DNA from: Laetmonice hystrix
Taxonomy: Eukaryota
DNA length: 64,000 nucleotides
Reading direction: 5' to 3'
NCBI GenBank assembly: GCA_965235115.1
Contig: OZ249446.1
Coordinates: 13,950,001 to 14,014,000 of the forward strand
The translations under genes were made by a program, and so were the position numbers. Under the pieces are notes generated by a model. It was not told the DNA's origin and made no database searches. It saw only the letters and a list, made by a program, of their open reading frames with translations. This document shows positions 3,943 through 60,794 of this stretch, piece after piece; position 1 is the first letter of the stretch; every line of letters begins with the position of its first letter.

Positions 3943-3986
3943 CCGTTTTGTGGTACCGAGGGCTGGTCATAGCCCATTCCCATACC
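3943..3986 (-). CDS. RBMS: 44-nt exon (GMGMGYDQPSVPQNG)
   Basis: cattttgcag|GGT ATG...AAC GG|gtgagt; phase 0 to 2; resembles vertebrate GMTLTYDP...IQNG. Confidence 0.88.
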
Positions 3987-5472
3987 CTGCAAAATGTATT
4001 TAAAAAACACGTGAAAACAGACACATATATTGAAAGTCCACCCTACAGCGGTTCGACCCAAACCGGCCGGACCAAAGGAAATGACAGAGCAGTTTCTGAG
4101 GTCAATACTGACTACCACATTACCGGGAAGATCAACATTTCAGAAAGGAAGTAAGGACTTTTATTATTCGGTTCTACACAATATTGAAATGGGACCTTCA
4201 GGTAGGTATATTTCCGTATTACGTTATCACCTATGGGATCACTGATAATATACATCCTCATCTCAACACAAATATCAAAGGAAGCTACAGGTGTGACAGT
4301 TAGGCCCTAGTTAACGCATGCCAGACGGTCGCCCAAGTCCAAGTACCACAACTAGGTTGTTAATGACGACGAAAAACGTCTCCAAATGCACGACTCATAT
4401 CTCCGCCCTTTCCACCAAGGTATTAACTACTGTCTCGGTTGTAGCTTTAATAAATGCCACCAACCGGTATATCTGATACACGCTCTGGGTACAATAAGTA
4501 ATGTTCTAATCCAAATAAAGGGCATAGCTCTACAATATGACGTATCATTCAAAGTTTACATACTCGATAAACTGGTTCTCAAACCTAAAACTACGACTAT
4601 AAGGTATGCATGTTATGATGTAAGTGTGGTGATGGCTACCACATGCTGGGTGACATACCAGAAACATTTCATGTTATATTCTCCACCATTCGTACAGCTC
4701 TGACTGTCCGTCGTGTAGACTAGGGTTGCTCACCCAGTCAGTCTGGGAAGACATATCTACGCTCCTCTACCGGCTCATTCAGCACCAATAACAGAGTTCT
4801 TTTAGCAGACTCAGATTTCTGCTGGCCGCGAACAATGCTGCAGGACTCTACCATTGTTTATATAGGGTGTGGACTGACTACCATATGGCTGGCATTGTAT
4901 TGACCTACTGACGTTTGGGGTGGGGGTGGGGGGTGGGGTTGTCTTGGGAGTCATGTGACTGCCACGTCCTCCTCCCCATGAAGTCTGTCGGGCTTTCTCA
5001 CTTCTCAACATCGTGGAAAACCCTCACCCACCTTTAAAATGACCTACCATCCCGTATATAACGTATTTATTGTAAGGAATTCAAATATTTCATTTGATTT
5101 CAGAGCAGAAGGGACGGAAGACCGGATACCTTATCCGAGTCCCTTTCTACTGGAGCCAAGTTATGTTAATCCCTCCAAAATTTAAAAATTTAAAAATCTC
5201 AATATTTTAAATCTGTTTGCCATCGTAGATCATGGAAAACTTGAAAGGATAACGTCGTGATACAATGAGACACACAGACAGATCGTCTGCTACTGTTAAT
5301 CCACCCGACCTGATCGTAGTCATTAAATTGTCCTTATAATCCACCGTACCACTACCCAACTCGGCGATTCGACTACCAAGGAATAATTCTAACACCACTT
5401 ACGTAGGTTATTACGCTTGGAATCACAAAGACATCAGCTATCAGACTACAAACCTGACCAGTAACTACTTAC

Positions 5473-5803: not shown

Positions 5804-6023
5804 CTGGCATACACTTTCCGTTGTAATCCTCAATGATTTTCTCACAGGCATCCTTTTGTTGCATACGACAGAATCCCACCCCTCGACTGATTCCGTTAGC
5901 GTTCCGTAATATACGCGTGGACACTACTTGACCGTAAGGTGAGAACATTTCGTCGAGGTCGTTTTCTGACATGTACATGGGAAGGTTAGCGATGTAGAGG
6001 TTCGTCGGGTCTTGTTCTTGTTG
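5804..6023 (-). CDS. RBMS: RRM2 exon ([15 protein letters not shown]...RGVGFCRM...GKCMP)
   Basis: ttgcag|CAA CAA GAA...ATG CCA G|gtaccg; 220 nt, phase 0 to 1. Lies within ORF 5781-6029. Confidence 0.97.
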
Positions 6024-6162: not shown

Positions 6163-6606
6163 ACACAAAATACATGACAATAAATATGTGTTGGGAAAGT
6201 GACACAAACTTTAGATTTTCAAGTTCCTTCCAATAGAAGCTTGACGCCACACAAATCTCCCCGAACTTGCAGAGACGAACCGACCAAACCTTCCCACAAA
6301 AAAGACGGAGGGGATTCGAACCCCAGAAGTTAGAGATCCTTTGGTCAGTGATCACGAAATATAAACTAGAGACCCCTGGGCGACTGTGGCACTCCGACAG
6401 AACCCTCAAAATGTTGAACTTACAACTTGAAAAAAAATAAACAAAACAACCTGTTGACACAGGAGAAACCCGGCGACTCCTCGCGTATAAACATACAGGG
6501 CAGAACCCGCCATTATGTGCTGAGTGCGAGCATGTTGGAATGTCGGTGATATTTTTTATTCCCGTCCGACATTACCGATTAACTGCGGGTGCGCCAGGCA
6601 AGGACG

Positions 6607-8915
6607 CCGGTCATAGGGGACCGCTCCTACCGACGGCACACCGGTCATAGGGAACCACTCCTACCGACGGCACACCGGTCATAGGGAACACCTCCTACCG
6701 ACTCTAACAGCGGCACCCCGGTAATAGGGAACACCTCCTCCCGACGGCACACCGGTCATAGGGAACACCTCCTCCCGACGGCACACCGGTCATAGGGAAC
6801 ACCTCCTACCGACGGCACACCGGTCATAGGGAACACCTCCTCCCGACGGCACACCGGTCATAGGGAACACCTCCTACCGACTCTAACAGCGGCACCCCGG
6901 TAATAGGGAACACCTCCTCCCGACGGCACACCGGTCATAGGGAACACCTCCTCCCGACGGCACACCGGTCATAGGGAACCCCCTAACGACGGCGCACCGG
7001 TCATAGGGAACACCTCCTACCGACGGCACCCGGGCATAGGGAACACCTCCTACCGACGGCACACCGGTCATAGGGAACACCTCCTACCGACGGCACACCG
7101 GTCATAGGGAACACCTCCTCCCGACGGCACACCGGTCATAGGGAACACCTCCTACCGACGGCACACCGGTCATAGGGAACACTTCCTCCCGACGGCACAC
7201 CGGTCATAGGGAACACCTCCCGACAGCACACCGGTCATACGGAACACCTCCTACCGGCGGCACACCGGTCATAGGGAACACCTACCGACGGCACACCGGT
7301 CATAGGGAACACCTCCTCTCGACGGCACACCGGTCATAGGGAACACCTCCTACCGACGGCACACCGGTCATAGGGAACACCTCCTACCGACGGCACACCG
7401 GTCATAGGGAACACCTCCTACCGACGGCACACCGGTCGTAGGGAACACCTCCTCCCGACGGCACACCGGTCATAGGGAACACCTCCTCCCGACGGCACAC
7501 CGGTCATAGGGAACACCTCCTACCGACGGCACACCGGTCATAGGGAACACCTCCTACCGACGGCACACCGGTCATAGGGAACACCTCCTCCCGACGGCAC
7601 ACCGGTCATAGGGAACACCTCCTCCCGACGGCACACCGGTCATAGGGAACACCTCCTACCGACGGCACACCGGTCGTAGGGAACACCTCCTCCCGACGGC
7701 ACACCGGTCGTAGGGAACACCTCCTCCCGACGGCACACCGGTCGTAGGGAACACCTCCTACCGACGGCACACCGGTCATAGGGAACACCTCCTCCCGACG
7801 GCACACCGGTCATAGGGAACACCTCCTCCCGACGGCACACCGGTCGTAGGGAACACCTCCTACCGACGGCACACCGGTCATAGGGAACACTTCCTCCCGA
7901 CGGCACACCGGTCATAGGGAACCCCCTAACGACGGCGCACCGGTCATAGGGAACACCTCCTACCGACGGCACCCGGGCATAGGGAACACCTCCTACCGAC
8001 GGCACACCGGTCATAGGGAACACCTCCTACCGACGGCACACCGGTCATAGGGAACACCTCCTCCCGACGGCACACCGGTCATAGGGAACACCTCCTACCG
8101 ACGGCACACCGGTCATAGGGAACACTTCCTCCCGACGGCACACCGGTCATAGGGAACACCTCCCGACAGCACACCGGTCATACGGAACACCTCCTACCGG
8201 CGGCACACCGGTCATAGGGAACACCTACCGACGGCACACCGGTCATAGGGAACACCTCCTCTCGACGGCACACCGGTCATAGGGAACACCTCCTACCGAC
8301 GGCACACCGGTCATAGGGAACACCTCCTACCGACGGCACACCGGTCATAGGGAACACCTCCTACCGACGGCACACCGGTCGTAGGGAACACCTCCTCCCG
8401 ACGGCACACCGGTCATAGGGAACACCTCCTCCCGACGGCACACCGGTCATAGGGAACACCTCCTACCGACGGCACACCGGTCATAGGGAACACCTCCTAC
8501 CGACGGCACACCGGTCATAGGGAACACCTCCTCCCGACGGCACACCGGTCATAGGGAACACCTCCTCCCGACGGCACACCGGTCATAGGGAACACCTCCT
8601 ACCGACGGCACACCGGTCGTAGGGAACACCTCCTCCCGACGGCACACCGGTCGTAGGGAACACCTCCTCCCGACGGCACACCGGTCGTAGGGAACACCTC
8701 CTACCGACGGCACACCGGTCATAGGGAACACCTCCTCCCGACGGCACACCGGTCATAGGGAACACCTCCTCCCGACGGCACACCGGTCGTAGGGAACACC
8801 TCCTACCGACGGCACACCGGTCATAGGGAACACTTCCTCCCGACCGCACACCGGTCATAGGGAACACTTCCTCCCGACCGCACACCGGTCATAGGGAACA
8901 CCTCCTACCGACTCT
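6607..8915. repeat. 34-bp minisatellite (CCGGTCATAGGGAACACCTCCTACCGACGGCACA), roughly 65-70 units, with a 943-bp higher-order duplication
   Basis: Period 34 read directly (6786, 6820). The rare variant CCCCTAACGACGGCG recurs at 6983 and 7926, and identical ORFs 7606-7806 and 8549-8749 are offset by 943. Confidence 0.97.
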
Positions 8916-8919
8916 CAGA

Positions 8920-9307
8920 GCCGGTGTCGGCATGATATTCCTTCCGATCCTCCGACCGCCCGAGCTTCCGACGATCGGAGGTAAATCGGGGGTCAGGTCG
9001 AAGCGTTCTCATCAGTACTCTCGCGTGCTCACACGAACCGACCGCGTTATCAGACGAACCGATCGACCAACGAACTCACACTATCCAAGAACCCCCGATT
9101 TACCTCCGACTGCCCGATGATGATGATCGATGAAAAGTCTGACACTGTCAAACTTTCCTCGGACTCACCGACCCTCCGATATTGCTCCGACCATCATTAT
9201 CACACGGCACGACCTTGTGCTCACACGGCCCGATATTTGGTCCGATCTCTCTCCGATGTCGGGCGGTCGGAGGATCAGAAGGAAATATCGTGCCGTGTGA
9301 CACCGGC
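8920..9307. mobile_element. Non-autonomous DNA transposon (MITE), about 390 bp, inserted in the minisatellite
   Basis: Imperfect ~45-bp terminal inverted repeats (TIRs): GCCGGTGTC..GGCATGATATTCCTTCCGATCCTCCGACCGCCCGA vs TCGGGCGGTCGGAGGATCAGAAGGAAATATCGTGCCGTGTGACACCGGC. Internal inverted pair TCGGAGGTAAATCGGGGG / CCCCCGATTTACCTCCGA. Target-site duplication (TSD) not resolved. Confidence 0.85.
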
Positions 9308-9310
9308 TTA

Positions 9311-9808
9311 AGAGCGGCACACCAGTCATAGGGAACACTTCCTACCGAGTCTAAGAGCGGCACACCGGTCATAGGGAATCCCTCCTACCGACTCTAAGAG
9401 CGGCACACCGGTCATAGGGAATCTCTCCTACCGACTCTAACAGCGGCACACCGGTAATAGGGAACACCTCCTACCGACTCTAACAGCGGAAAACCGGTCA
9501 TAGGGAACCCCTCCTCCCGACGGCACACCGGTCATAGGGAACACCTCCTACCGACGGCACACCGGTCATAGGGAACACCTCCTATATACCGACTCTAACA
9601 GCGGCACGCCGGTCATAGGGAATCCCTCCTACCGACTCTAACAGCGGCACACCGGTCATAGGGAACACCTCCTACCGACTCTAACAGCGGCACACCGGTC
9701 TTAGGGAACACCTCCTATATACCGACTCTAACAGCGACACACCGGTCATAGGGAACACCGCCTACCGACTCTAACAGCGGCACACCGGTCATAGGGAATC
9801 CCTCCTAC
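9311..9808. repeat. Continuation of the same minisatellite, dominated by the ~42-bp variant (extra CTCTAACAGC)
   Basis: Units CCGGTCATAGGGAA(T/C)(C/A)CCTCCTACCGACTCTAA(C/G)AGCGGCACA seen directly. Confidence 0.93.
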
Positions 9809-10869: not shown

Positions 10870-12331
10870 GGGATTTGTGTGTTTGCCCTGGGTTGTGTTA
10901 TCCTTGGGTGGTGTGTTTGCCCTGGGTTGTGTGTTGGCTCTGGGTTGTGTGTTAGCCCTTGGTTGAGTTAACCTTAGGGCTTGTGTTTGCCCCGGGTTGT
11001 GTTTTGGCTCCGGGTTAAACACGACGTATATCAGCCCTGGGCTGTGTTAGCCTTGGGTGGCGTGTTTGCCATGGGTTGTGTGTTAGCCCTGGGTTGTGAG
11101 TTAGCCTTGGGCTGTGTGTTAGCCCTGGGTTGCGAGTTAGCCTTGGGTTGTGTGTTTGCCCCAGGTTGTGAGTCAGCTCTGGGTTACACACGTATCTCAG
11201 GCCTGGGCTGTGTTAGCCTTGGGTGGCATGTTTGCCCCGGGTTGTGAGTCAGCTCTGGGTTACACACGTATATCAGGCCTGGGCTGTGTTAGCCTTGGGT
11301 GGCATGTTTGCCCTGGGTTGTGAGTCAGCTCTGGGTTACACACGTATATCAACCCTGGGCTGTGTTAGCCTTGGGTGGCATGTTTGCCCTGGGTTGTGAG
11401 TCAGCTCTGGGTTACACACGTATATCAGGCCTGGGCTGTGTTAGCCTTGGGTTGTGTGTTTGCCCTGGGTTGTGAGTCAGCTCTGGGTTACACACGTATA
11501 TCAACCCTGGGCTGTGTTAGCCTTGGGTTGTATTTTTCTTTTGAAATGCACGGGCATCAGGGGTAACCCAATTACTTTGACAATGTCCCTAAAGAGAAAA
11601 GTTGTATAGTCCTCTACAGGAATCGAACCCAGGCCCTAAGATTACTGCACCCATTCGCATAGCATAAGGTGTCGACATCCATGCCCACTAGGCCACCGTG
11701 TTTGCCCCGGGTTGTGAGTCAGCTCTGGGTTACACACGTATATCAACCCTGGGCTGTGTTAGCCTTGGGTTGTGTGTTTGCCCCGGGTTGTGAGTCAGCT
11801 CTGGGTTACACACGTATATCAGGCCTGGGCTGTGTTAGCCTTGGGTGGCATGTTTGCCCCGGGTTGTGAGTCAGCTCTGGGTTACACACGTATATCAACC
11901 CTGGGCTGTGTTAGGCTTGGGTTGTGTGTTTGCCCCGGGTTGTGAGTCAGCTCTGGGTTACACACGTATATCAACCCTGGGCTGTGTTAGGCTTGGGTTG
12001 TGTGTTTGCCCCGGGTTGTGAGTCAGCTCTGGGTTACACACGTATATCAACCCTGGGCTGTGTTAGCCTTGGGTTGTGTGTTAGCCCTGGGTTGTGAGTT
12101 AGCCTTGGGTTGTGTGTTTGCCCTGGGTTGTGAGTCAGCTCTGGGTTACACACGTATATCAGGCCTGGGCTGTGTTAGCCTTGGGTGGCATGTTTGCCCC
12201 GGGTTGTGAGTCAGCTCTGGGTTACACACGTATATCAACCCTGGGCTGTGTTAGCCTTGGGTTGTGTGTTTGCCCCGGGTTGTGAGTCTGCTCTGGGTTA
12301 CACACGTATACATATCAGGCCTGGGCTGTGT
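10870..12331. repeat. Composite satellite: ~18-bp units (GTGTTTGCCCTGGGTTGT) grading into a 76-bp higher-order unit, interrupted at ~11532-11697
   Basis: Period 76 between 11701 and 11777; 18-bp subunits visible at 10870-11160. Confidence 0.92.
11595..11670 (-). mobile_element. tRNA-derived SINE head fragment
   Basis: Pol III B-box GGTTCGATTCC on the minus strand (11619-11629); no complete cloverleaf. Confidence 0.4.
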
Positions 12332-15528: not shown

Positions 15529-15620
15529 CTTAGCCATTTGAGCCTGGACGCCTTGGGACTGGAGGGCCTTCACGGCTGACTCGGCCGCCATCGGGGATTC
15601 AAAGTCCACGAATCCATAAC
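15529..15620 (-). CDS. RBMS: RRM1 RNP1 and linker exon ([31 protein letters not shown])
   Basis: gtcgttgcag|GT TAT GGA TTC...GCT AAG|gtacat; 92 nt, phase 1 to 0. Missed by the ORF track. Confidence 0.96.
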
Positions 15621-20393: not shown

Positions 20394-20452
20394 CTTTACA
20401 CTTGTTTGTATTCTGGTCTATGATTGCTTTTGTTGATGTGATTTTACCAAAC
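20394..20452 (-). CDS. RBMS: RRM1 middle exon (FGKITSTKAIIDQNTNKCK)
   Basis: tgtttcag|G TTT GGT...TGT AAA G|gtaagt; 59 nt, phase 2 to 1; resembles RBMS YGKIVSTKAILDKTTNKCK. Confidence 0.96.
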
Positions 20453-23400: not shown

Positions 23401-26277
23401 GTGGTTAAAATACTTTCCCTAAACTACAAAACCAGAAACCACCTGCCTTCACTCGTAACCCATTGCTTCACCCCGACCCCAGAATCTGGTTTAGGAGGAA
23501 AAGTTCCTGCACAAGATGACTGAAAAAAAAGTCAAAATGGACCAGAATTTTATTGCGACATTTTGAAATCTCAAATATCAAAATATCTGATTCCGAAAGG
23601 TAGCACGAACCATGTTATGTTTTCATGATGTATAGCTGTGACTGGCAAATATTAGTTGCCAGATCTCTCGCACTCACAGTGTCCCGCTGTGGGAGTGACG
23701 ACGACTCACAGGGCGGGCCTGGGTCAGCTACCCGAAGAAAAGAATCCATATTTTGCACGTACACGATGATAATATAACTCTGGGACTTTCTAAAACACTC
23801 ACGATTTCTGGCTTTGTATACGATCAAAATCTAAAATAACGTACACCATCAGAAATACAGAAAAACTCTGCTCGTCAAAAAAGTCAATATCGTAATAAGA
23901 ATGGCTTGCGGGAAATCTAAGTATGCAAAGAATGACGCACGGTCTTACTTCTTTTTATAGATAAATTGGGCATTGTGTTTTCTAGGAGGCTACGCCCACA
24001 CCCACGCTCAATCTGTTGTCCGTCTCGGCAGACATATAATAAATATACCGACAAAACGAGAGTTGATACTGAAGGAATCGGAGCCGAAATGGTCTGCTTC
24101 GGTGAACGAGTGGCCCGGATGTAACCACATAATTCATCTTCAACCAGACTCAGCGAGTCCAGATACACGACGTCTGCCGAGTAGTGACGTCACAAACAAA
24201 GCGCACTCACTGAACCCACTCACTGACCTGGGGTGGTGGCCACGCGGACACCATGGCAACTGATCCTGTGGTTATCTCATTCACTCACAGAGGGCGCTCG
24301 TGTTACAATGATACATTCTTGTGGAACCAACTGCACCTTGTCCAGCCCCCCCCCCCCCCCCACAACAAAACTTTCTAGGCGTGTCATAGGCTTGCGTCCT
24401 TGGAATATGTGTAATGGGACACACGGCGGTAACTAATGCCTCCTTCTTGCCCTTTTTATTCCGGGTAAATTGACATCTTTACCCGGTTCTCGTCCACTTA
24501 CTGTGGGAGACCATGTTTCGTGCCGTCAAGTCATATCTCTCGTTGCTACCCACTGTGTTCACCGGGTGGTTAAGTATTGTTTATCGTCCCGTTATGTTCT
24601 CCAAACGTCACGCAGACAATACAGCGGAGCCGGAGCACACATTCTGCCCGTCATAACGACCGTCAGTAGTGATTATTTACTGGGTCAATCTGATTCCATC
24701 TTGGAGTGGAGCACTGGATGACATCCACCAACCATACAAGTCTCTCCACCACCAACCCACCCCTAATCAACCACTCAACATGACCCGTTTACCAATCGCT
24801 GTGGAATAAATATTTGAGGCGCCTTTTTTCGAAGTGGAAGGGGGGGGGGTTCTGAGAATCCTGCATGCTGGCTAGCCTCCCGGGCGAGTTACGGCCTTGC
24901 TCACAGGAGCGACGTCTGTATGGTGAACAATTCCACTGTTAATTGTTTGCCGTTACGTAGCAGTGGGGGCGTGAGCAGTGTGGACCCAGCGACCCGCCCG
25001 CCTAGCCAGCTTTCCCCGGCTTGATAAACAAAGGCAGTCATTATTATGTATTACAGTCTAATCGTGTTCGATCCGCTTACAATGGGGCCTGTCCGCTTTA
25101 TACAACCACCACCAACCGCCACTCTGCTAGGCCAGAGTTTTAACATCGTCTCCTGACCATTCCTCATGTCAATTCTGAAATTACATGAATACATTGAGAG
25201 TTGGAAGGGCTCTCGAATTCGAAACGTTGAGAGGTGTAATCCTGTTACGGCACACTGAGTTTGGTCGGGTTGGACCCTCAGCTTCACTGTTGATCATGAT
25301 GTCATGATGTAATGTTTCCAGGAATTAAGCTCTTCAATCAATGAGCTCTTCAATGGATCGGAATCAGTAGTACTTATTCAACACAAAGTTCATGGGGTCA
25401 GACGGTTTCTCTGGAACCATGCCGAGTTGTGGTATAACCCATGCACGACAAGTGACCCTTTCTTAGACTCGGTGGGGAAACTTTACCCCACGAACAGGTC
25501 GGGGGAAAGGTGTCTGTAGTAGTCAAGGACTTTAGGGTATCCTTGTCAAGGGTGGCTAAAAATGGGGAACAGGTGTGACTCACCCCCGCCCCCACCCCCA
25601 CCCCACCCCTCCTACAAGTCTGCTTACATTCCTTCTGTCGACAGCCAACCTGTTGCTACGCCACCGTATCAAATGCTTCATAACCACCGACACCCACGGG
25701 TTTTTTTTCTTTCCTTTTGGTTCGTTTTTCTCCGTTCTTTCTTTTCTCAGCCAAATGCCTACCGCTGTCTACATAAACTTTCGGCAGACTAGGATATCAA
25801 ACACGAATATAAGAGCCCTTATGTTTTTCTGTTTATACAGAAAGTGGTGCGTTTCCATGACAACTGGCATGTACAACATGAGTGTGTCTTTCTGGCAGAG
25901 GGACTGGAACGAGTTACAGCCAGACCGCTGACTCCCTGTCTCTTGATCTGTGAACAAGTAGTCAGGCCAACAGTTGGGGTAACGTTCCAAATAACCCTCC
26001 CCCCTCGCGCCCACTCACAGGGTGTGTGGCTTGGGGTTTTCATATCTATTTCCCACGATCAAACCTTGTGAAAAGTAAGAAAAAACACAAGCTTTGCTGA
26101 ATTTTGGGTGCCTGGTAAGTCGGAACAGAACGACTCTCTGTGTGATCCTGGAAGGAAATGTACTTTTCTACCTTGCCCTCAATACACATGTAGTAAGTAC
26201 ACTTCTGCCCCTAACAGTCGTGTATCTAATGAGAACCAGCGTTATTTCAACAGAGATCAAGACAAGGTGATACTTAC

Positions 26278-26444
26278 TGCGAACATAGATTTACAAGGTC
26301 CTTGTCTGTCGTGTTGGGCGTTAGTCCTCGTATATAAAGGTTGGTTTTACTCAGCTGTTCATTGCCCGACCCACTTTGGTTGCTGGAATGGCTACTGTTG
26401 CTTGCTGTCGCCGACGGCATTGTGCTACGACCTGGTGTGTACGT
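26278..26444 (-). CDS. RBMS: Exon encoding the Ser-rich N-terminal region and the start of RRM1 (RNP2 LYIRGL)
   Basis: ctcttcttttccag|ACG TAC ACA...[57 protein letters not shown]|gtaagt; 167 nt, phase 0 to 2. Confidence 0.96.
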
Positions 26445-26467
26445 CTGGAAAAGAAGAGCAACAATTT

Positions 26468-26715
26468 AACTCCCTGCCGCTTCAATAGATAACGATACTG
26501 TATAAAAACTCCCTGCCGCTTCAATAGATAACGATACTGTATAACAAACTCCCTGTCCCTTCAATAGATAACGATACTGTATAACAAACTCCCTGCTGCT
26601 TCAATAGATAACGTTACTGTATAACAAACTCCCTGCTGCTTCAATAGATAACAATACTGTGTACTTCAATAGATAATGCTGCTGTATACCCTGTCACTTC
26701 AATAGATAACGCTGC
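26468..26715. repeat. ~40-bp tandem repeat (ACTCCCTGCCGCTTCAATAGATAACGATACTGTATAACAA) x~6, degenerating
   Basis: Unit starts at 26470, 26509 and 26549; abuts the acceptor of exon 26278-26444. Confidence 0.92.
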
Positions 26716-26856
26716 TATAGAACAGAGTCAGATATTACACAATGCAAGGAGAACGTTTATGGTCCTCCATTCTGCATAAACTATTCTTTTATTTCTGGTC
26801 CTGATGGAATGTCCCGAGGTTGTTAATCCGGGATCGTTCAGACTTGAGGCACTTAC

Positions 26857-26883
26857 TGCCAGATTTAAACCATCCCCTGACGT
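26857..26883 (-). CDS. Candidate 27-nt in-frame microexon (TSGDGLNLA)
   Basis: catttaatgtgtttgcatcag|ACG TCA GGG GAT GGT TTA AAT CTG GCA|gtaagt; phase 0-0, no stop, inside a phase-0 intron. Splice signals only. Confidence 0.35.
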
Positions 26884-29800
26884 CTGATGCAAACACATTA
26901 AATGTGACTTTTGTTCAAGAGAACGTCATTCTGATAATCGTATAAACTGGGTAACTCTTTCCTGAACCTACGCCTTTTCATTTCATTTTAGAAAACACCA
27001 TAAGTCACGCCTTAACACCCAGTCCCGTGACTTGTTCAATCCCTGACTGCCACGTTCGACTGGTAGGACCCCCAGTGTAAGAAACATGACTCAGTGTCTC
27101 TCACACTCTCTCTCTCTCACTCTCTCTCTCTGTCCATCTCTCTGTGGTCCCGTTTTACATAACAAACAGGAACAACTTTCACACCTCTTCCTTCCGGCCA
27201 ACGTCCAGCTGTCAAGTCAGGAGAGGAAAATGTTCATGACTTCCGACGCTTTGAACTTCCTCTGTCCTTCCCTTCAGGAACAGATGTCGTCCACAAGTTG
27301 CTGAGAGAGTGTGAGAGAGACCATGAATCGCCCAAGGCCAGGTCTAACTGTGTCTGATCTCCCGAGCGGCGGCAGCACCAGAGTCTACCAACCATTCTTA
27401 CTAATGTCCGCAGGCCTTAACCTCATTTCATTTCTCCTGAACCTACACACAAAAGAACTCGGGCTGTGGAAGGCCTTGAAAAAGAGGCATTCTACTTGGG
27501 GTGACCCAAGGCCCTGGTTTTTAGTTTGCAAACCGAGTCTTAATATTAAAATCTTAAGATTGAACTCTTGTTTCTGAGCTTCTGATTGGTCCTTCAAATG
27601 AAGTCAGCCAATGAGAGACCATAACACAAGTCAGTCTTAAAATTTCAGTCTAACGATTGGTAAAATGACGAACTTAAAACCGGGGCCAGGTATGAAATGT
27701 AAGAATTCTCCCGAAGCTATTTCCAAATGCTTTCCACTAGGACACCCGCATTTTTTTTAAACAATTCACTCCAGCTCTGCACGTATTTAAAACTAACCTA
27801 GACGCAGAACTTCCTAAATACGGGACCTTGGGAACTGTTGTGTGCGTGACTGATCTTGAATTTACTGGCGGATGATTATTTTTTTCAGTTTAGATTAAAT
27901 AAATAATGAGCACGTCGGACTGTACAACGTGCATACGAGGAGAAAATTACTGCATGCTGAAACTGATGTAACGAAAGCGGATATGACCCAACATCCCTAC
28001 GAAACCGAGGCATGGGCCTACGGTTATTTTCCATTGTAAATTTCCCACGGTTTTGGGAAGGGGATTAAGGGCAGGGCAGGGGTAGGGCTAGGCAAGGAGA
28101 TTTCCTTTTCTTCTATATCTGGGCGGTGTGTGGGTTACTTACTGGAATAGGAATAGTGATAAATTTTAACAATTTTATCCCAATATTTCGGGGAAATGTC
28201 AACACGGGGGCCGAGTCCCGTCTTGGGCCGGGAATCGTGACCGACTTTACTTCCTCCCATCACATGTCATCGGATGTTACCGTGAGGGTGTGGGAGGGGT
28301 TGTTTATACCAAGACGTGTGTAGAGTTTGTTTCTCATCGTGATACTCGACTTCACAAACAGAGGCCGACGGCAGGGCCAGGGGGGTACCTGCTGGGGGGT
28401 GTGCCTGCTGGGGGGGGGGGGTAACCTGCTGGGGGTGCCTGCTCGGAGCGGGGTGCTGATCTGAGGCCGGGTGTTGTCAGGATATCCCACCCTCGTACCG
28501 ACCTCCCCCCCCCCCCAGCCCCAGCCCCACACACCTCCAATCTGGGTTACTGAAGTCCACGGCACACCGGGATCACAATCCCTCTTAAATTATACAAGTT
28601 ACAAGGGCATCACGATGTGTGATGTAACACAGCTACCTCCGCCCACACAGCAACAGCTCATGGGTCCACACCAACTCACTTCGTAATCTCCTTCATTTTA
28701 CTTCACAAATGGCGAGATCCTGACGGTGAGGATACTTTGGTCTTGTGTCTGGATATTATTTAGAAACATACAGAGGATGATACGCGTACCGGGTTTTCTT
28801 TTTCTCAACCTGATAGACCGGCAGATACGTTCACAACAGACGGCCACATCTCTCCCAACATATTGTCAACCCCCCCCCCCCCTTAATTAACCAATCCTGT
28901 TATTTCATTTATGGGTCAGTCTTCTGTTTCTTACGGTAGTCCTCGTCTTATATGAGAATATTTACAAAGAATATAAATGGGGCAGTCTGAATCTGATGGG
29001 GGGGGGGGGGGTTCCCGTTGAGAATTTGCTCAAATACCACAGAATTCACCCCCCCCCCCCCCGCTCCCGCCCGTGTTAACTTCCCGGCACCGACCGTCTG
29101 CTAACAAACGACATACAGGTGACTGAGTGGCCATGAAATATTTCCGTGAGAACCGCTCGCCAGACAAACGTCTGTGTGTTATAGACGTCACACCCCATCT
29201 CCTGCAGCAATTAGTCCCTGTGTGTCTGCCCCACATATATGGGCGTGTGTGGGTGCGTGACTTGTGTCATTTATCATGGGTTGTAATGATGGCCATGACT
29301 AGCTCATCATAATACCACTAATATACTCCCATAGACGGTCATTAGTGGCGTTCAGTGTTCCTTATACTCGACACCCGCTTACCTAACAACGTGACCGTGT
29401 ATTTATGGGCGTTGTATATTTTTCCATGTCCGGTGATGATGTTTAGGTGATACGGGGGGAAACCTTCACAATGTTGACAAAAGTCCATGTATTACCCAAT
29501 AAAAGAAGTCAATCCATACAAGGTAAGAGACCTACACGGTAAGCGCTATCAGCAAGGTTTCTAACACTGGACGTAATCAAGACACCACACCACGCGTTAT
29601 CAGGAATTCTACCCCGATGTATCATCAGTCCTCCACCCTCTAAACACAAAAGGGTTGGTATAAACACCCCAGACTGTCTATAAATAGTCGGCCTTGGGTT
29701 GGGGGGGGGGGCAGATTGCAATGCGCAGTCAGTCAGCCTATCAGTAGGGTTGACACAGACAGGGTTGGGGGTTAGTTTAGTTTAGCCTCTGAGGGCAGTG

Positions 29801-42290: not shown

Positions 42291-43221
42291 ATCTGGAGTT
42301 TGCTGGTATGTTTCAGCCTGTCAGTGTGTCAGGGGCGGTTCTCGGCACTATCTTCCTCCTATATATGTCATTTATATCACGAGTACCCGCTGGCTTTACT
42401 CGTCGAGTACATGTATATTCATAGCCTGCGTACATATAAAAGACATTATCAAAGTCCGTCTAGAAGAAGCCCAAAGCCCCCCCCCCCCCCCCCCCAGCCG
42501 ACCGGGCCAACAGTCCGGTCTCACTTTCTCATCAGTAATAGTCTACATACCCACGGCTTACACTAAGTTACAGCCAGGATTCCTACTTTGAATCTCTCCA
42601 ATTCAGCACAGGATTTCCTTTTGACTCTTCTGTTTGTCGCTCGGACATTTCAAGTCATATTATTGTATTGTAACCCAATCAAGAGACCAGAACCATCAAA
42701 GTATATGGGAAACTGTATCAAAGTACAAGGCCACCAAAAGATGTTTTAGGTCAAAGGTATTATATATACAGAATATATTAACACCTTGTGTTCAAGAGAT
42801 TTTTAACCCCATCCTTTTCAAAAACAAACATCAAAATAATAATTTATATATTCAATCTTCCGCACCACTCGTCCTGTTTTCAATATTTACACGAAATAAC
42901 CAGACTACTACTATACACCCAAAAGAACACTGAAGAGGTTTCTGACCTCCGTCCTACCGTAACGCTGACCTTGGAATGACCATGACTCGACCTCTGCGGC
43001 CAGTGTCACCAGTCCAGGTGTCACCATCCTGTGACAGTGACACTGTGACAGGATGATGAATGGTGACACTGGACTGACACGACACATACTCAGCCCTCAC
43101 ACATCTATCTACTCCACCTCAACTTTACATAAATTAACATTCTGTCTCCCTGACCAATTTTGGCATCCATTTTAAAACTGGTCCTCAGAATCCTTATCAC
43201 AGACAGAGGTAGGTAACTTAC

Positions 43222-43263
43222 CATCCAGTTGTCTTGACTGTACCCATAGTAACTTGGACTTAC
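43222..43263 (-). CDS. RBMS: 42-nt phase 0-0 exon (VSPSYYGYSQDNWM) that starts with GTAAGT
   Basis: Branch point CACTAAT, then T7CTTCCAG acceptor, and ATG|GTAAGT donor. Open in phase 0 and Tyr-rich like RBMS N-termini. The next exon starts in phase 0. Confidence 0.8.
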
Positions 43264-46200
43264 CTGGAAGAAAAAAATACAATTAGTGTCATGTTCAACA
43301 GGTCTCGGTAAGTATAGCAAGTAAATGAGACCAATCAATCAATCAATCAATCAATAGAATCACACATACCGTACATAATGTAAGAATGCTATACTGGCTA
43401 TTGCTATTGCTCAACATTTACCATTACCGGTAAACCAAATGTGGACAAACCAAATTTGGACAAAATGAATAGGTAACCACCCAGATATTGCCATGGAGAG
43501 AGTCGTACGACACCTGTTACTACGGACGTTACCATGGTAACAGAGTACCAGTAAATGTTACCAAGTACCTAGAAATCTATCATAATAAACACCACGAGGG
43601 AATGTGAAATGACCAGCAGTGGGCAGTGACGCCAGCAAGGTCACTGCCAACATTCAATGTCAACCATCAAGGTCACTGCCAACATTCAAGGTCACACCAT
43701 CCAGGTCATCACAAAAGTCCCCCCGATCAAGTCCTGTGGATATAAAACACACGGATTTGCTGTTACAAGTCTATTTTCTCTCCAGTCGAAAGCTATCAAA
43801 ACAGAGCGCCATATTTTCCAATTTCGCGGTCGGCTGTAATTCAATTTCACGGGTCAAGCTACTATTTACAGTTAGGTGCGGGGACCCAGGGCACTCACTC
43901 TCTCCTGAGGACCAATGTCTGTGTGCCACGTCGATAACGTCTCAATTAATGAACACGTTATTCACCTTGTGTAGATAACAATAATCTGATAACGCTAACT
44001 TGTCAACGGACCAGGGAGAGTAGACTGTCAATAAACTAGACTGTCCCGATTGTCTGGCTGTCGGCGGCCAAATGTGACTCATCCAAATACTGACTTCTCC
44101 CTACTGCTGAGTCAGCATAACCGCTAGGGGACAAGAGAGAGAGAGAGAGAGAGGGGGGGGGGGGGTTACAGCAGATCCTGATGGGGGCTCTCTCTTGATG
44201 GAACTCTCTCTCTCTTGTTGAACGCAGAGATAGGAATGAGCCAAGAGTACTGCCAAGGTCCACTCCGACAAACCACATCCTCAACCTCAGAAATACTTTA
44301 ACTAGCTAACTACCAACGTACTCGGATATCTCCGTAAAATACTTTTGAACTCACATCATCATTAGTGTATATCACAAAACATAATGTATTATGACATTAT
44401 TGTCCTTTTATATAATGATTTCCATTTAGCGCATCCCTACGGTTCCGTTACGGTATCCGTCAAACGTATCCCTATAATTGCTTCACAATTCACTAATTCC
44501 GTTGACGGGGTACAATGTCAATTTTACGCCGAATATTGACGTATCTCTCAGTGCAGGACCCTCACGAGGACAGACTCGGTTAGCTGGAAAAACATGAACA
44601 CTGGCAAACCACAGCTTCCAGTGAACCACTGAACTACCACATTCCACTGTGTTATCAATAACCGACTTTCTCGGTATCAATGACAACGAGTCAATAATAT
44701 ACGGTGCCCCATTTGCCCACTTAAATTCTCCACAATGCCCCTACCATAATTTCCATATGCAGCGGTAAGACTGCATCTCCAGCCTGCGTTACAATCACCG
44801 GATTCCGCGGAGCTCCCCCCCCCCCCCCCCAGTTGAAACCCTCCCCGTTCATGATACAGGGCATTAACAGTTAAATTGAACAAGTCGCTGACTTTACACG
44901 CCGGCCGGCAGAGAGCGCTGCAGGCGTCGCGACAACTGCTCGCCGGACCAGGAAATACGTCACTTTCTGCTTTACTAACCGGACATGATTACATCCCCTA
45001 ACACTGACATTAGGACGTCTCAAGTCCCCTAAACCCGATACCGACCGCTCTGATGAGCCAACCAACCACACCACGCCGGTCACTTTCACTTGAAAGTGGA
45101 CCCCAAGCGTTGCCTAGCAACCGAGGCAACAACACTTCCACACGGGATAAGAATTAGTCATGCTTTAGCCGATAGAAGATTTTCGAATAATTTGATCTGA
45201 TAGGCTAATGAGCACACAAACAGCCTCCTCTAAGGCTTCAAAACAAGGTCCACTTCCAGCAAGATGGGATCTCGATAACATGGGCCTGTGTGTCTAATAT
45301 AAACAATGTTAGCGTTGGGTATAAAGAACAGACGACTCATACAGTTACTGTATATGACTCATGTTCCGCGAATCCTATATCCTGAAGGCTTCTTCCACAG
45401 ATTGAACTGACTTTTCGGTCAACGGTTATTAGGCATTACAAGTGCACTCTATGTCATTGGGTCATTTTTTCTTACACCACATCCCCCCTCCTCCACTTCC
45501 CTGGCCTTAACACGGTCAGGTGTAATCCCATCACTAGCTCTCCACTGTTTTTTATTGTGATCACCTCATTCCGTTTAACAGTATGTAATTTTACTAACCA
45601 AATTAAGGTGCTTAGATTATGGAACCCGTCTGACCATACTAACCACCTGAACCACCAAACAGGCCCTGGACAATGTCATCCAACCAATCAATTATAGACC
45701 CCCACCAGACATAGCAAAACCACCTAACCACTCGCAGACAGGAGGCCAATATAATGTATGCTCTCTGTTTAAATCCCACTCTACTGGATAAAGGGATACG
45801 TCATGCTGGGAGAAGGAAAACTTTCCATAAGGTTGTTCGACTAAACCAGCCACAAAATATTTCATACTTCAATCTCTAAGTCCTGCCAAGACGATGTCAG
45901 CCGGTACACAACTACCCATTGTTTGGGCCGAGTTATATTTGTTGTTACATGCTGCCGTCAGCCTGCACCCAGTGTGTCAACCTCCCCTCCCCCCCCTAAT
46001 TCCGTTATTTGGGGACATTACAAGTGATTCACACCCACACCCGCATGATTCACATCTCCCACCATTTTTTGCCCCTTCCAATCTCATGTTCAGCTTCCAT
46101 TTCATGCATGGGATGAACAATAGAACAAAAAGTTGATTTAACACAAAGTAAAAAGTCAAATCATGGCTACTTTACTGAGACCCGTCAAACCGTGCAGGTT

Positions 46201-54574: not shown

Positions 54575-54586
54575 CTCGGTACTCAT
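54575..54586 (-). CDS. RBMS: Putative start-codon exon, coding part (MSTE); exon may extend 5' to the acceptor at 54722
   Basis: Minus strand reads GCG TAG GAG ATG AGT ACC GAG|GTAAGT: in-frame stop just upstream, G at -3, and a perfect phase-0 donor compatible with the next exon. Upstream acceptor CACTAATGATTTTCAG at 54723. Not supported by homology. Confidence 0.6.
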
Positions 54587-57822: not shown

Positions 57823-59009
57823 CCACCCTCTATCCCTACAACACAGAATCCCTGTCATTCTACACATACAGCCAGGTCACCAATAACAGTTAGCACATAT
57901 TTTTGCTGACCTACACATTTATGTACATACCTGACCTACATTTCCCGGACACAATGTACACACGGCACGCGACGCTGACTTGTCTAAAAATCTTCCATGC
58001 ATAGCATATCTCCTGTTTTGAAGTCCAAGTCAATCTCTGAATTTCATTTATACGATAATTTTCCGAGATACAGTAGACGAGAACCTTATCAGAATTTTAA
58101 CAACGAATTTTAGCAGTCACTGGACTCTACAAGATATTACCGACCATTTTTAGTATAATGAAATATAACTCAGAGTAGTACCTGTTGGAATTTTAACAAA
58201 GTGTAAATTGGTTACTGCTCTGGTTATTATTTCCAAAAGTCACATTCAAAAATTCTACGAAACTGAAAAATATTTCAGATATGGAAATTCATGCAGAGTA
58301 ACAAAATAAAAAAGACCGACTGCAGTTAATTTAGTCGACTGAAGGGACCAATAAATAAACTGAAAGCTATAATTTACGTGCTGAGGCATTTTGTGTAAAA
58401 AACAACAAAAAAGTGTCTTTTTAACTTGTGCACCAACTACCAACTGTCACTCAGCATGAAAGTCACTTTCTTTGAAAAGGGGGCGTGGCAAAATTTTAAG
58501 ACGCCCCTTATACTTTTTTCCATAGTATGTGTTAGTCTTGGAGTGTAGCCAATGTGGCAAAAGCTGACATCGCACACAATCTCAGTAATGAGGTCAAGTT
58601 TGGCTGTCACAGCTGCGTAGCAAAATGTAAATTTTGAGCGTAATTATTCGTTTGAGGCCACTGAATCTAATCTGAGGGCATACGTGATCAGAAAACACCA
58701 CAGAATGCTTCCTCTCGCAGTACTACAACATGGACCGTCTCCTTCTCTAAAATGTATCATTTCAACGAGAAAAACTGGGGGTTTCTTGAAGCTAGTGAAA
58801 GCACCTTTAACTAGAGCACAGGGTCCCGTGATGTCAAGTATAGGCGGAGACCATGTCACATGAACCGGGAGGGTCATGTGACCGTCAAGGGTCCACACGC
58901 AGCGAGAGTCTGAACCTCTGAACCTCACACACCAGGCACCTTCTCCGCCGTTTCGGTTTCTTTCCCCCTGAGCAACTGCCATCTACCACGTCCCCATCAC
59001 TGCCCTTAT

Positions 59010-60190
59010 CTCTGAGACTTGGGCAGACTTTCTCTACGTGACAAACTGGTTGTCTTGGGCAAAGTTTCTCTACATGACAGACTGGCTGGCTCGGGCAGAC
59101 TTTCTCTACGTGACAGACTGGTTGTCTGGGGCAGAGTTTCTCTACGTGACAGACTGGTTGTCTGGGGCAGAGTTCTACGTGACAGACTGGTTGTCTGGGG
59201 CAGAGTTCTACGTGACAGATTGGTTGTCTGGGGCAGAGTTTCTCTACGTGACAGACTGGTTGTCTGGGGCAGAGTTCTACGTGACAGACTGGTTGTCTGG
59301 GGCAGAGTTCTACGTGACAGACTGGTTGTCTGGGGCAGAGTTCTACGTGACAGACTGGTTGTCTGGGGCAGAGTTTCTCTACGTGACAGACTGGTTGTCT
59401 GGGGCAGAGTTCTACGTGACAGACTGGTTGTCTGGGGCAGAGTTTCTCTACGTGACAGACTGATTGTCTGGGGCAGAGTTCTACGTGACAGACTGGTTGT
59501 CTGGGGCAGAGTTCTACGTGACAGACTGGTTGTCTGGGACAGAGTTTCTCTACGTGACAGACTGGTTGTCTGGGGCAGAGTTCTACGTGACAGACTGGTT
59601 GTCTGGGGCAGAGTTCTACGTGACAGACTGGTTGTCTGGGGCAGAGTTCTACGTGACAGACTGGATGTCTGGGGCAGAGTTCTACGTGACAGACTGGTTG
59701 TCTGGGACAGAGTTTCTCTACGTGACAGACTGGTTGTCTGGGGCAGAGTTCTACGTGACAGACTGGTTGTCTGGGGCAGAGTTCTACGTGACAGACTGGT
59801 TGTCTGGGGCAGAGTTCTAGGTGACAGACTGGTTGTCTGGGGCAGAGTTCTACGTGACAGACTGGTTGTCTGGGGCAGAGTTCTACGTGACAGACTGGTT
59901 GTCTGGGACAGAGTTTCTCTACGTGACAGACTGGTTGTCTGGGGCAGAGTTCTACGTGACAGACTGGTTGTCTGGGGCAGAGTTCTACGTGACAGACTGG
60001 TTGTCTGGGGCAGAGTTCTACGTGACAGACTGGTTGTCTGGGACAGAGTTTCTCTACGTGACAGACTGGTTGTCTGGGGCAGAGTTCTACGTGACAGACT
60101 GGTTGTCTGGGGCAGAGTTCTACGTGACAGACTGGTTGTCTGGGACCAACTATCTTTACTTGACAGACTGATTGTCTGCGACAGACTGGT
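59010..60190. repeat. 33/36-bp minisatellite (TCTACGTGACAGACTGGTTGTCTGGGGCAGAGT[TTC]) x~34
   Basis: Both unit lengths are multiples of 3, which gives long ORFs on both strands. Confidence 0.97.
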
Positions 60191-60794
60191 TGCCTAGAGC
60201 AGACTTTCTTCACAGATGAGTTGACTGTCTCCAAGACAACCTGGCAGTCTCCAGAGAGAGTTCTATCCATGACGGACTGTCTTATACGTCCCTGACCTCA
60301 CCCCTCTCACTGCCACTCATGCAGTAAAACTCCCCTGGCACAGGATGTCTGCCCGCAAACCTCCCACACTTCTCGGTTCTGACAAGTCACAGACCCCTGT
60401 CCGCTCACGTCAGCTCTGGCCTGTCCTTCACGTTTTGTTTAATTCGCCCTCTTGTCCTCATCATGCAGTCTTGTCACAGGAAGCACAACCGTGGAACCGA
60501 TACGGAGGAAAGCCTTTCCGGCGAAGCGCCAGTCAACACCTACCTCTAGGTTTTTAAGGCTACACGTATACACTGGAGCACATGCAGCGTTCTGATCTCT
60601 AGTCTAGGAGGGGAGAAGGTTGCTACTTCCGGAGAAACCCGACACCAAGGTTTCCACTGAATTAACCTCAGGAAGTCCCAGGGCGCCAGTATGGATTGAA
60701 CAACGCCCGAGGTAGCAGTGGAGCCGCGAGGCGGGAGGGGTCCCTCCTGATCTGAGCCGCATTGTTCACACTCCTGATCCAAAGGTATCTTGCC

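What the first reader, a model, noticed from the sequence alone, without database searches (positions are those of the whole stretch)
43216..43290. In-frame recursive-splicing-type exon: inclusion rebuilds the upstream donor
Seen: the 42-nt exon has one of the best acceptors in the gene (CACTAAT branch point, T7CTTCCAG). Its first six bases are GTAAGT, and it has its own ATG|GTAAGT donor. The putative upstream exon ends CCGAG|GTAAGT, so splicing it to this exon recreates GAG|GTAAGT. Established: AG|GT ratchet points followed by a short exon with a competing 5' splice site mediate recursive splicing in long introns of Drosophila and vertebrate genes, and such exons often carry stops. Inference: this exon is coding and frame-neutral (VSPSYYGYSQDNWM), so the two competing donors would switch a Tyr-rich 14-aa N-terminal peptide in or out while splitting a ~28-kb intron into 11.3-kb and 16.8-kb steps.
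Basis: partly seen in the sequence, partly recalled or inferred. Interest (0 to 1): 0.8.

Follow-up and report, generated by a model that had tools for sequence, protein, structure and literature searches.

The report
Expressed recursive-splice-type microexon in RBMS gene
A 42-base protein-coding mini-exon of an RNA-binding-protein gene (RBMS/alan shepard type) is real and present in RNA. It is built so that joining it to the previous exon re-creates a splice donor, a known "recursive splicing" design, but whether that donor is ever used remains unproven.

Summary

The gene is an RBMS/alan-shepard orthologue with two RRMs, probably from an annelid or other lophotrochozoan.

New here:
- A spliced RNA contig (run X3) joins the exon's own donor (43222) to the next exon (26444). 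The exon is therefore real and included in that sample.
- A conserved upstream coding exon, U, lies outside the window, 73.2 kb upstream. The intron is therefore about 90 kb, not 28 kb.
- Either upstream exon ends in AG, so the junction re-creates (C/G)AG|GTAAGT, at least as strong as the exon's own donor.
- Two more AG|GTAAG sites sit in the same intron.
- Genome-wide, 16 of 38 other strict pyrimidine-tract-YAG|GTAAGT sites have a donor 36-79 nt downstream, against 0 of 18 controls.

Not shown: any skipped isoform, intermediate or lariat, or conservation of the site. The one RNA contig suggests inclusion predominates.

Verdict: a putative expressed RS-exon (Ubx mI/mII or "annotated RS-exon" type), a new member of a known kind. 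The scan flagged ratchet-like sites in other long introns of this genome.

The parts
43282..43288 (-). Candidate branch-point motif CACTAAT. The CTAAT core matches yUnAy, with the branch A at -20 from the exon.
   Evidence: Sequence read. Position counted by hand. Not tested experimentally.
43264..43277 (-). Pyrimidine tract T7CTTC plus the CAG acceptor.
   Evidence: The 3' splice-site score (13.7) is among the best of the gene's exons.
43222..43263 (-). 42-nt microexon, phase 0-0, no stop, encoding VSPSYYGYSQDNWM.
   Evidence: At least its 3' 33 nt (43254-43222) are in RNA contig 17 of run X3, joined to exon E2. The peptide resembles the conserved PAAYGSYxQ motif.
43258..43263 (-). GTAAGT at the exon's 5' end. 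After ligation to an exon ending in AG it forms a regenerated 5' splice site (RS-5ss).
   Evidence: Score is 12.7 with exon U (CAG) and 11.6 with the MSTE exon (GAG), against 10.5 for the exon's own donor. Its use as a donor is NOT shown.
43216..43221 (-). The exon's own donor, ATG|GTAAGT.
   Evidence: Its use is shown by the RNA junction 43222->26444.
26278..26444 (-). Exon E2 ([16 protein letters not shown]...[21 protein letters not shown]), the start of RRM1. It is the acceptor partner of the microexon.
   Evidence: Run X3 covers only this exon in the 3-kb stretch and joins it to the microexon and to E3.
54575..54586 (-). Unverified.
   Evidence: Sequence only. No homology and no RNA evidence was obtained.
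20394..20452 (-). Exon E3 (FGKITSTKAIIDQNTNKCK), with donor AAG|GTAAGT.
   Evidence: tblastn. RNA junction E2->E3.
15529..15620 (-). Exon E4 (YGFVDFESP...QAQMAK), the end of RRM1.
   Evidence: tblastn. 80% DNA identity to the relative's contig.
5804..6023 (-). Exon E5 (RRM2).
   Evidence: Pfam RRM_1, E = 1.3e-16. Also.

Best explanation
The element is a genuine, expressed internal microexon of the animal's RBMS/alan-shepard orthologue, and it has the anatomy of a recursive-splicing exon (RS-exon). It sits 73.2 kb into a roughly 90-kb intron between a conserved upstream coding exon U (outside the window; it ends ...CCCCCTCAG|GTAAGG, phase 0) and exon E2.

Proposed mechanism:
1. The exon is defined by its strong branch point, pyrimidine tract and CAG acceptor together with its own donor 42 nt downstream.
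2. It is ligated to the upstream exon (U, or possibly the unverified MSTE exon; both end in AG). This writes a perfect (C/G)AG|GTAAGT donor across the new junction.
3. In the second step the 16.8-kb remainder is removed from one of two donors. Using the exon's own donor gives inclusion and adds 14 residues, VSPSYYGYSQDNWM, a second copy of the Tyr-rich motif that U already ends with. Using the regenerated donor gives skipping and yields the U-E2 arrangement seen in orthologues.

What is shown: the anatomy, the exon's reality, use of its own donor, the reading frame and the long-intron context.
What is inferred: that the upstream intron goes first, and that the regenerated donor is ever used.

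My odds: real exon about 0.95; physiologically relevant recursive use of the regenerated donor about 0.45.
For: Anatomy and frame.

RNA:
- Run X3 covers E2 but not its flanking introns.
- Its 2128-nt contig joins 43222 to 26444 and 26278 to 20452.

Gene identity: RBMS/alan shepard.

Long-intron context:
- Upstream exon U and the 90,018-nt intron.
- The regenerated donor scores 12.7 against 10.5 for the exon's own donor. Published work links this configuration to RS competence (PMC6224609, PMC8605326).
- The three best juxtaposed AG|GT sites of the intron all lie on the gene strand, at extended coordinates 94898, 72365 and 43263. About 0.26 are expected, P(>=3) = 0.005.
- The site at 94898 is followed by a 48-nt stop-containing stretch and AGG|GTGAGT.

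Genome-wide:
- The strict motif occurs 39 times, against 18-19 in controls.
- 16 of the 38 other sites carry a donor 36-79 nt downstream, against 0 of 18 controls (p = 5e-4). This genome therefore holds a class of RS-exon-like elements, and the 42-nt exon fits it.

Peptide homology to the PAAYGSYxQ motif: p = 0.0015.
Against: - No skipped (U-E2) isoform, RS intermediate, saw-tooth or lariat was seen or could be looked for. Read laying is capped at one call, and only contigs exist, not raw reads.
- The single RNA contig runs 33 nt into the microexon without breaking at the E2 junction. This suggests inclusion is the dominant form in that sample.
- The contig stops at exon position 10, so neither the acceptor at 43263 nor the upstream partner is directly confirmed.
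- Exons that begin with a donor-like sequence are common and mostly constitutive in deuterostomes (PMC6224609). The anatomy alone does not prove use.
- Conservation of AG|GTAAGT is untested.
- Orthologue proteins from other phyla mostly show no insert at this position.
- PWM scores and thresholds are approximate and were chosen after the fact.
Confidence: 0.5

Rival explanations
1. It is an ordinary cassette or constitutive coding microexon. The first two codons happen to be GTA AGT (Val-Ser). The regenerated donor is never used, either because it is repressed (for example by the exon junction complex) or because it is kinetically irrelevant. The exon simply adds 14 residues.
For: - The RNA contig shows inclusion and no break at the E2 junction.
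- Annotated exons that rebuild a donor are numerous and mostly constitutive in deuterostomes (PMC6224609).
- The peptide has homology support, so the exon sequence is constrained by coding.
Against: - A perfect CAG|GTAAGT that is stronger than the exon's own donor is the configuration reported to favour recursive skipping (PMC6224609, PMC8605326).
- The exon lies in a 90-kb intron with two further ratchet-like sites.
- It matches a genome-wide class of 36-79-nt RS-exon-like units.
- Orthologues generally lack an insert here, so a skipped form is expected to exist.
Confidence: 0.35
2. The exon belongs mainly to a 5' leader or alternative-promoter transcript, or uses a different 5' boundary. Examples are the MSTE exon or another first exon, or the weak AAG acceptor 11 nt inside the exon. 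Translation would then start at the exon's last codon ATG or at the ATG in E2, and the 14-residue peptide is not made in that form.
For: - The RNA contig begins at exon position 10, so the 5' boundary and upstream partner are unseen. A graph branch at exactly that point is what an AG-ended upstream exon joined at position 12 would give (my inference).
- The exon ends in an in-frame ATG.
- Many orthologue isoforms have alternative N-terminal exons joined directly at the E2 start.
Against: - The internal AAG acceptor scores about 0, against 14.7 for the CAG acceptor.
- A 31-nt exon would shift the frame for both U and MSTE.
- The peptide in the frame read from position 1 resembles the conserved motif.
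- A heterozygous SNP could equally explain the contig break. DNA contigs differ at about 1% of sites nearby.
Confidence: 0.12
3. It is a chance splice-site-like motif in an intron and not an exon.
For: None beyond the general frequency of splice-like motifs in long introns.
Against: - A spliced RNA contig joins 43222 to 26444.
- The expected number of such sites is 0.005 per intron.
Confidence: 0.01

Closest known systems
Drosophila Ultrabithorax microexons mI and mII (resplicing at exon-exon junctions; Hatton et al. 1998, as summarised in PMC8605326)
   Same: - A short (51 nt there, 42 nt here), in-frame, coding cassette exon inside a very long intron (about 73 kb there, about 90 kb here).
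- The exon begins with a donor sequence, so ligation to the upstream exon regenerates a 5' splice site.
- Inclusion or skipping would be decided by competition between the regenerated donor and the exon's own donor.
   Different: - A different gene (an RRM protein, not a Hox gene) and a different phylum (lophotrochozoan, by best matches).
- Resplicing is experimentally shown for Ubx. Here only inclusion is seen.
- Here the peptide duplicates a motif that already ends the upstream exon.
Vertebrate 'annotated RS-exons' repressed by the exon junction complex (Blazquez et al. 2018, PMC6224609; Sibley et al. 2015)
   Same: [quoted passage not shown]
- Strong 3' splice site, and an own donor weaker than the RS-5ss.
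- Included in mRNA.
   Different: - EJC dependence is untested.
- Their survey covered deuterostomes, Drosophila and yeast, not lophotrochozoans.
Drosophila intronic ratchet points with cryptic RS-exons (Burnette 2005, Duff 2015, Joseph 2018, as summarised in PMC8605326)
   Same: - The same pyrimidine-tract-CAG|GTAAGT motif with a second donor about 50 nt downstream, in a long intron.
- The neighbouring site at extended coordinate 94898 (outside the window) and 16 genome-wide sites look like this type.
   Different: - Fly cryptic RS-exons are out of frame or carry stops, are poorly conserved inside, and are absent from mRNA.
- This exon is open, in frame, has peptide homology and IS in mRNA.

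Membership tests
RS-exon (recursive-splicing exon; Ubx mI/mII type or annotated RS-exon) | The exon's first bases, joined to the upstream exon's last bases, reconstitute a 5' splice site. | tested here: met
   CAG (exon U) or GAG (MSTE exon) plus GTAAGT scores 12.7 or 11.6 respectively. The gene's real donors score 4.7-12.0.
RS-exon (recursive-splicing exon; Ubx mI/mII type or annotated RS-exon) | A downstream 5' splice site less than about 100 nt away that defines the exon. | tested here: met
   ATG|GTAAGT lies 42 nt downstream, and its use is shown by the RNA junction 43222->26444.
RS-exon (recursive-splicing exon; Ubx mI/mII type or annotated RS-exon) | Location within a long intron. | tested here: met
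   The U->E2 intron is 90,018 nt, made up of 73,199 + 42 + 16,777. It would be 28 kb if the MSTE exon is the partner.
RS-exon (recursive-splicing exon; Ubx mI/mII type or annotated RS-exon) | The regenerated donor is actually used: a skipped isoform made through an intermediate, lariats with their 5' end at the RS site, and saw-tooth nascent RNA. | not testable with these tools
   Only assembled contigs of one RNA-like run are available, and only one read-laying run was allowed. That contig shows inclusion only.
RS-exon (recursive-splicing exon; Ubx mI/mII type or annotated RS-exon) | Conservation of the AG|GTAAGT junction in related species. | tested here: inconclusive
   The relative's contig (ENA ERZ25767047 ctg38247) has exons 80-90% identical to the window's. 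It could be read only to 11.1 kb upstream of its E2, and no homologue was found there. In this genome the exon is 16.8 kb upstream of E2.
Cryptic '0-nt' ratchet point (fly type) | The RS-exon is excluded from mature mRNA and is out of frame or carries a stop. | tested here: not met
   The exon is open and in frame, and it is present in the spliced RNA contig.
RBMS / alan shepard family (host gene) | Two RRM domains with the family's signature sequences, and orthologue-level similarity. | tested here: met
   - tblastn of family members maps RRM1 and RRM2 exons in order.
- Profile search hits are named RBMS1/2/3 or alan shepard, with E down to 1e-120.
- Pfam RRM_1, E = 1.3e-16.

The most novel reading that the evidence does not exclude
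The 90-kb intron of this lophotrochozoan RBMS gene is removed in up to four steps, through ratchet sites at extended coordinates 94898 and 72365 (outside the window) and at 43263. The last ratchet has been co-opted as a coding RS-exon. Its peptide is a second copy of the conserved Tyr-rich PAAYGSY-like motif, so the choice of donor after the first ligation toggles one versus two copies of that motif in the protein's N-terminus. This would be the first RNA-supported recursive-splicing exon outside insects and vertebrates.
Probability: 0.3. Interest if true: 0.65.

Novelty: new member of a known kind. Interest (0 to 1): 0.45.

Why it matters
Recursive splicing is documented experimentally in Drosophila and vertebrates. 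The held literature has nothing on annelids, molluscs or the RBMS/shep genes.

A coding RS-exon with RNA support in a lophotrochozoan would extend the mechanism to the third bilaterian superclade. It would be backed by a genome-wide class of RS-exon-like units. It would also give a compact test case with a 42-nt exon, two near-consensus competing donors and a recognisable peptide read-out. That case could show how the regenerated-donor versus own-donor choice is made, by fly-type competition or by vertebrate-type EJC repression.

If the donor is never used, the exon is simply an unannotated microexon of a conserved RNA-binding protein.

Tried and rejected
1. Looked for the N-terminal exons inside the window with tblastn of orthologue N-termini. 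Nothing convincing lay above 43.3 kb. The exon was found outside the window by searching the window's own genome.

2. The look-up of sequencing runs on the 60-nt microexon stretch sampled only 3 words. Only the DNA runs were listed, so it was uninformative for RNA.

3. I laid E2 rather than the microexon. This showed the microexon-E2 junction but not the exon's upstream junction.

4. Orthologous loci from annotated genomes were not on record for P0174 (a Crassostrea isoform), P0185 (Branchiostoma floridae) and P0154 (Owenia fusiformis).

5. Walked a relative's 851-kb ENA contig by hopping between called ORFs.
   - Reached 11.1 kb upstream of its E2.
   - There are no further called genes to hop on.
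   - No microexon homologue was found in the stretch reached.

6. A search for small E2-containing ORFs in other relatives found only distant species.

7. The window's own protein, or a close relative's full-length protein, is not in the protein collection. No annotated isoform could be consulted.

8. The internal AAG acceptor idea for the contig break scores about 0, so it is judged unlikely but not excluded.

9. Literature searches linking RBMS/shep, molluscs or annelids with recursive splicing found nothing relevant.
Full report
**1. The observation**

- A CTAAT branch-point motif has its A at -20. It is followed by TTTTTTTCTTCCAG.
- The exon is GTAAGTCCAAGTTACTATGGGTACAGTCAAGACAACTGGATG (43263-43222). 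It is 42 nt with no stop and encodes VSPSYYGYSQDNWM.
- Its donor GTAAGT lies at 43221-43216.
- The putative upstream exon ends ATGAGTACCGAG|GTAAGT at 54575.
- The downstream exon begins at 26444 in the same phase.

AGGTAAGT occurs three times on this strand of the window and never on the other strand. The other two occurrences are ordinary donors.

**2. The gene**

Open segments and tblastn with family members place a two-RRM gene on the minus strand.
- Exons: E2 26444-26278, E3 20452-20394, E4 15620-15529, E5 6023-5804, E6 5561-5473, and further exons down to about 700.
- A library-wide HMMER search with the RRM2 exon and a profile search return RBMS1/2/3 and 'alan shepard' proteins. Pfam gives RRM_1.
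- The best named match over the RRMs is the annelid Owenia fusiformis (81%). The N-terminal region is most like molluscan proteins.
- Earlier notes of the scan also call this genome annelid or lophotrochozoan (I did not test this independently).

**3. Is the exon real?**

Two searches for sequencing runs found four runs from one sample and study. I laid all four on window 25000-27999.
- X1, X2 and X4 cover the whole stretch, so they are DNA.
- X3 covers only E2 (bins 26200-26499) plus a high-copy repeat.
- X3's 2128-nt contig aligns to 26276-26445 and has loose ends on both sides.
- The downstream loose end is window 20421-20450, which is E3.
- The upstream loose end is window 43223-43252, and base 43222 is absorbed into the alignment.

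X3 is therefore RNA-like. The junction from the microexon's donor (43222) to the E2 acceptor (26444) exists in RNA.

The contig carries 33 nt of the microexon and ends at exon position 10.
- The acceptor at 43263 and the upstream partner are therefore not directly seen.
- The contig does not break at the E2 junction, where a substantial U-E2 or MSTE-E2 isoform would create a branch in the assembly graph. I infer that inclusion predominates in this sample.
- This is an inference about assembly behaviour, not a measurement.

**4. Coding support**

Orthologues from molluscs, a brachiopod, nemerteans, a hemichordate and amphioxus carry a conserved motif, P-x-P-A-A-Y-G-S-Y-x-Q. It lies immediately before the residues that correspond to the start of E2, TY(T)PRSMPAASP.

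The microexon peptide (SPSYYGYSQ) resembles this motif. Tested against 20,000 random stop-free 14-codon windows of the same intron, the empirical p is 0.0015.

**5. The upstream exon and the true intron**

Nothing in the window above 43.3 kb encodes the conserved N-terminal region.

A search of the window's own genome found it at G000:C12:14066463-14066651.
- This is on the same strand, 73,199 nt upstream of the microexon and outside the window.
- It has an acceptor (ttgttgcag|).
- It encodes ...KRNAMSPTATAP...RYSTPNTATVYGSYRPPQ.
- It ends CAG|GTAAGG in phase 0.

Its 3' end is the better match to the conserved motif. U-E2 therefore reproduces the canonical orthologue arrangement, and U-microexon-E2 would carry the motif twice.

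The intron between U and E2 is 90,018 nt. I have no evidence for or against it. A separate first-stage note (s1-319988) concerns its donors.

**6. The recursive-splicing anatomy**

Scores below use approximate splice-site PWMs. The frequencies come from my own recollection of published consensus tables, so the scores are indicative only.

| Site | Score |
|---|---|
| Microexon acceptor | 13.7 (among the gene's best) |
| Regenerated donor with U (CAG\|GTAAGT) | 12.7 |
| Regenerated donor with MSTE (GAG\|GTAAGT) | 11.6 |
| Microexon's own donor (ATG\|GTAAGT) | 10.5 |

A regenerated donor stronger than the exon's own donor, together with a strong acceptor, is the configuration linked to recursive skipping in published work.
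- Blazquez et al. state that the strength of the RS-5ss determines whether an RS-exon is constitutive or alternative, and that EJC-sensitive RS-exons have a stronger 3' splice site and a weaker 5' splice site (PMC6224609).
- Joseph et al. show donor competition in flies (PMC8605326).

[quoted passage not shown] This exon meets that definition.

**7. Context in the intron**

On the gene strand of the 90-kb intron, the three best juxtaposed AG|GT sites are as follows.
- 43263.
- Extended coordinate 72365 (ttgcag|GTAAGG).
- Extended coordinate 94898 (ttacag|GTAAGT), followed by a 48-nt stretch with an in-frame stop and then AGG|GTGAGT. This is the layout of a cryptic fly-type RS-exon.

These sites would cut the intron into 21.6, 22.5, 29.1 and 16.8 kb.

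Order-2 Markov simulations expect 0.26 such sites, with P(>=3) = 0.005, and 0.005 sites as strong as 43263. The thresholds were chosen after seeing the sites. The antisense strand has nothing comparable.

**8. Context in the genome**

- The strict pattern Y10-N-YAG|GTAAGT occurs 39 times in 627 Mb. The same pattern read backwards occurs 19 times, and a scrambled hexamer control 18 times.
- I fetched the 38 other sites and the 18 controls.
- 16 of 38 have a donor scoring at least 8 at 36-79 nt downstream. This compares with 0 of 18 controls within 80 nt (Fisher p = 5e-4) and 2 of 18 within 120 nt (p = 0.02).

This genome therefore contains a class of acceptor-donor ratchet motifs followed by a short exon-defining donor, and the 42-nt microexon fits it.

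The scan's earlier notes flag ratchet-like sites in other long introns of this genome, in ephrin, srGAP, Eph and TCF genes.
- One follow-up (s1-310938) reached a similar conclusion and stated that no RNA data exist.
- One search shows that run X3 behaves as RNA, which may help those cases too.

**9. Conservation**

A protein fragment 93% identical to E5 led to an 851-kb eukaryotic contig in an ENA metagenome assembly.
- Its exons are 80-90% identical in DNA to the window's exons. The introns do not align. That is the right evolutionary distance for the test.
- By hopping between called ORFs I reached its E3 and E2, and 11.1 kb upstream of E2.
- No homologue of the microexon lies in that stretch. 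In this genome the exon is 16.8 kb upstream of E2, and the relative's E2-E3 intron is twice as long. The test is therefore inconclusive.
- The relative does have an RS-exon-like unit 6.6 kb upstream of its E2: cccag|GTGAGC, then 46 nt, then CAG|GTATGT, with scores 10.5, 11.0 and 9.7. It is not homologous in sequence and not a multiple of three.

Proteins of more distant orthologues mostly have no insert between the motif and E2. An amphioxus isoform carries a 16-residue Tyr/Ser-rich cassette (ILDVWGSTRSYSPSYM) at exactly this position, and mussels and oysters carry other small inserts there. This junction is thus a recurrent site of alternative microexons in the family.

**10. Conclusion**

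Shown:
- The sequence anatomy.
- The exon is real, and its donor is used in RNA.
- It is in frame and has homology support.
- It lies deep in a 90-kb intron.
- The junction with either candidate upstream exon rebuilds a consensus donor.
- Similar units recur in the intron and in the genome.

Inferred, not shown:
- That the upstream intron is removed first.
- That the regenerated donor is used at all.
- That a skipped isoform exists.
- That the peptide is translated.

I rate the RS-exon mechanism at about 0.5. An ordinary microexon whose donor-like start is silent rates about 0.35, and a leader or alternative-boundary reading about 0.1.

It is a new member of a known kind (Ubx mI/mII, annotated RS-exons). 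Its interest is moderate, mainly because of the phylum and because RNA support exists.

Noticed in passing
outside the window: G000:C12:14044898 and 14022365 (minus strand), 21.6 and 44.1 kb downstream of exon U: Two further juxtaposed acceptor|donor sites lie in the same 90-kb intron: ttacag|GTAAGT and ttgcag|GTAAGG. The first is followed by a 48-nt stretch with a stop and then AGG|GTGAGT, like a cryptic fly-type RS-exon. With 43263 they would split the intron into 21.6, 22.5, 29.1 and 16.8 kb.
   Followed up: partly
genome-wide (loci L020-L057, against controls L058-L075): 16 of 38 strict pyrimidine-tract-YAG|GTAAGT sites have a good donor 36-79 nt downstream, against 0 of 18 scrambled-hexamer controls. 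This suggests a class of RS-exon-like elements in this genome. Nine of the 16 have lengths divisible by three.
   Followed up: partly
window 43254 (exon position 10): The RNA contig of run X3 ends 9 nt short of the microexon's 5' end. A branch in the assembly graph at exactly this point could be a heterozygous SNP at the third base of the Pro codon. It could instead reflect use of the weak AAG acceptor at position 11|12 with an AG-ended upstream exon. Unexplained.
   Followed up: partly
outside the window: G000:C12:14066463-14066651 (minus strand): A conserved upstream coding exon of the RBMS gene (...KRNAMSPTATAP...TVYGSYRPPQ) has its own acceptor. At least one more 5' exon must therefore lie still further upstream, and the gene spans more than 116 kb.
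   Followed up: partly
L019, + strand coordinate about 15770 (relative's contig ENA ERZ25767047:ctg38247), 6.6 kb upstream of its E2: The related species has an RS-exon-like unit in the equivalent intron: cccag|GTGAGC, then 46 nt, then CAG|GTATGT. It is not sequence-homologous to the microexon. Its E2 acceptor is a NAGNAG (ttcag|cag|ACG).
   Followed up: partly
window 27500-27700: A short repeat is extremely abundant. Summed contig word depth is about 300,000 in the DNA runs against about 30 in the flanks, and it is also present in the RNA-like run X3.
   Followed up: no
window 58900-60300, 6600-9700 and 10900-12300: Long tandem arrays lie inside the gene's introns. Translated, they give repeated units such as CPRQPVCHVEL, EVFPMTGVPSGGGVPYDRCAVGRRCSL and HSPGLIYVCNPELTHNPGQT.
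   Followed up: no
whole window: Strand composition is strongly asymmetric. On the + strand C is 17,068 and G is 13,493, so the gene's sense strand is G-rich (skew about +0.12) and slightly T-rich. Part of this may come from the tandem arrays.
   Followed up: no
window 3935-3989 and 2171-2268 (minus strand): Two further blocks are 85-86% identical to the relative's contig. They lie between E6 and the C-terminal exons and are probably additional coding exons that my protein-based model missed.
   Followed up: no
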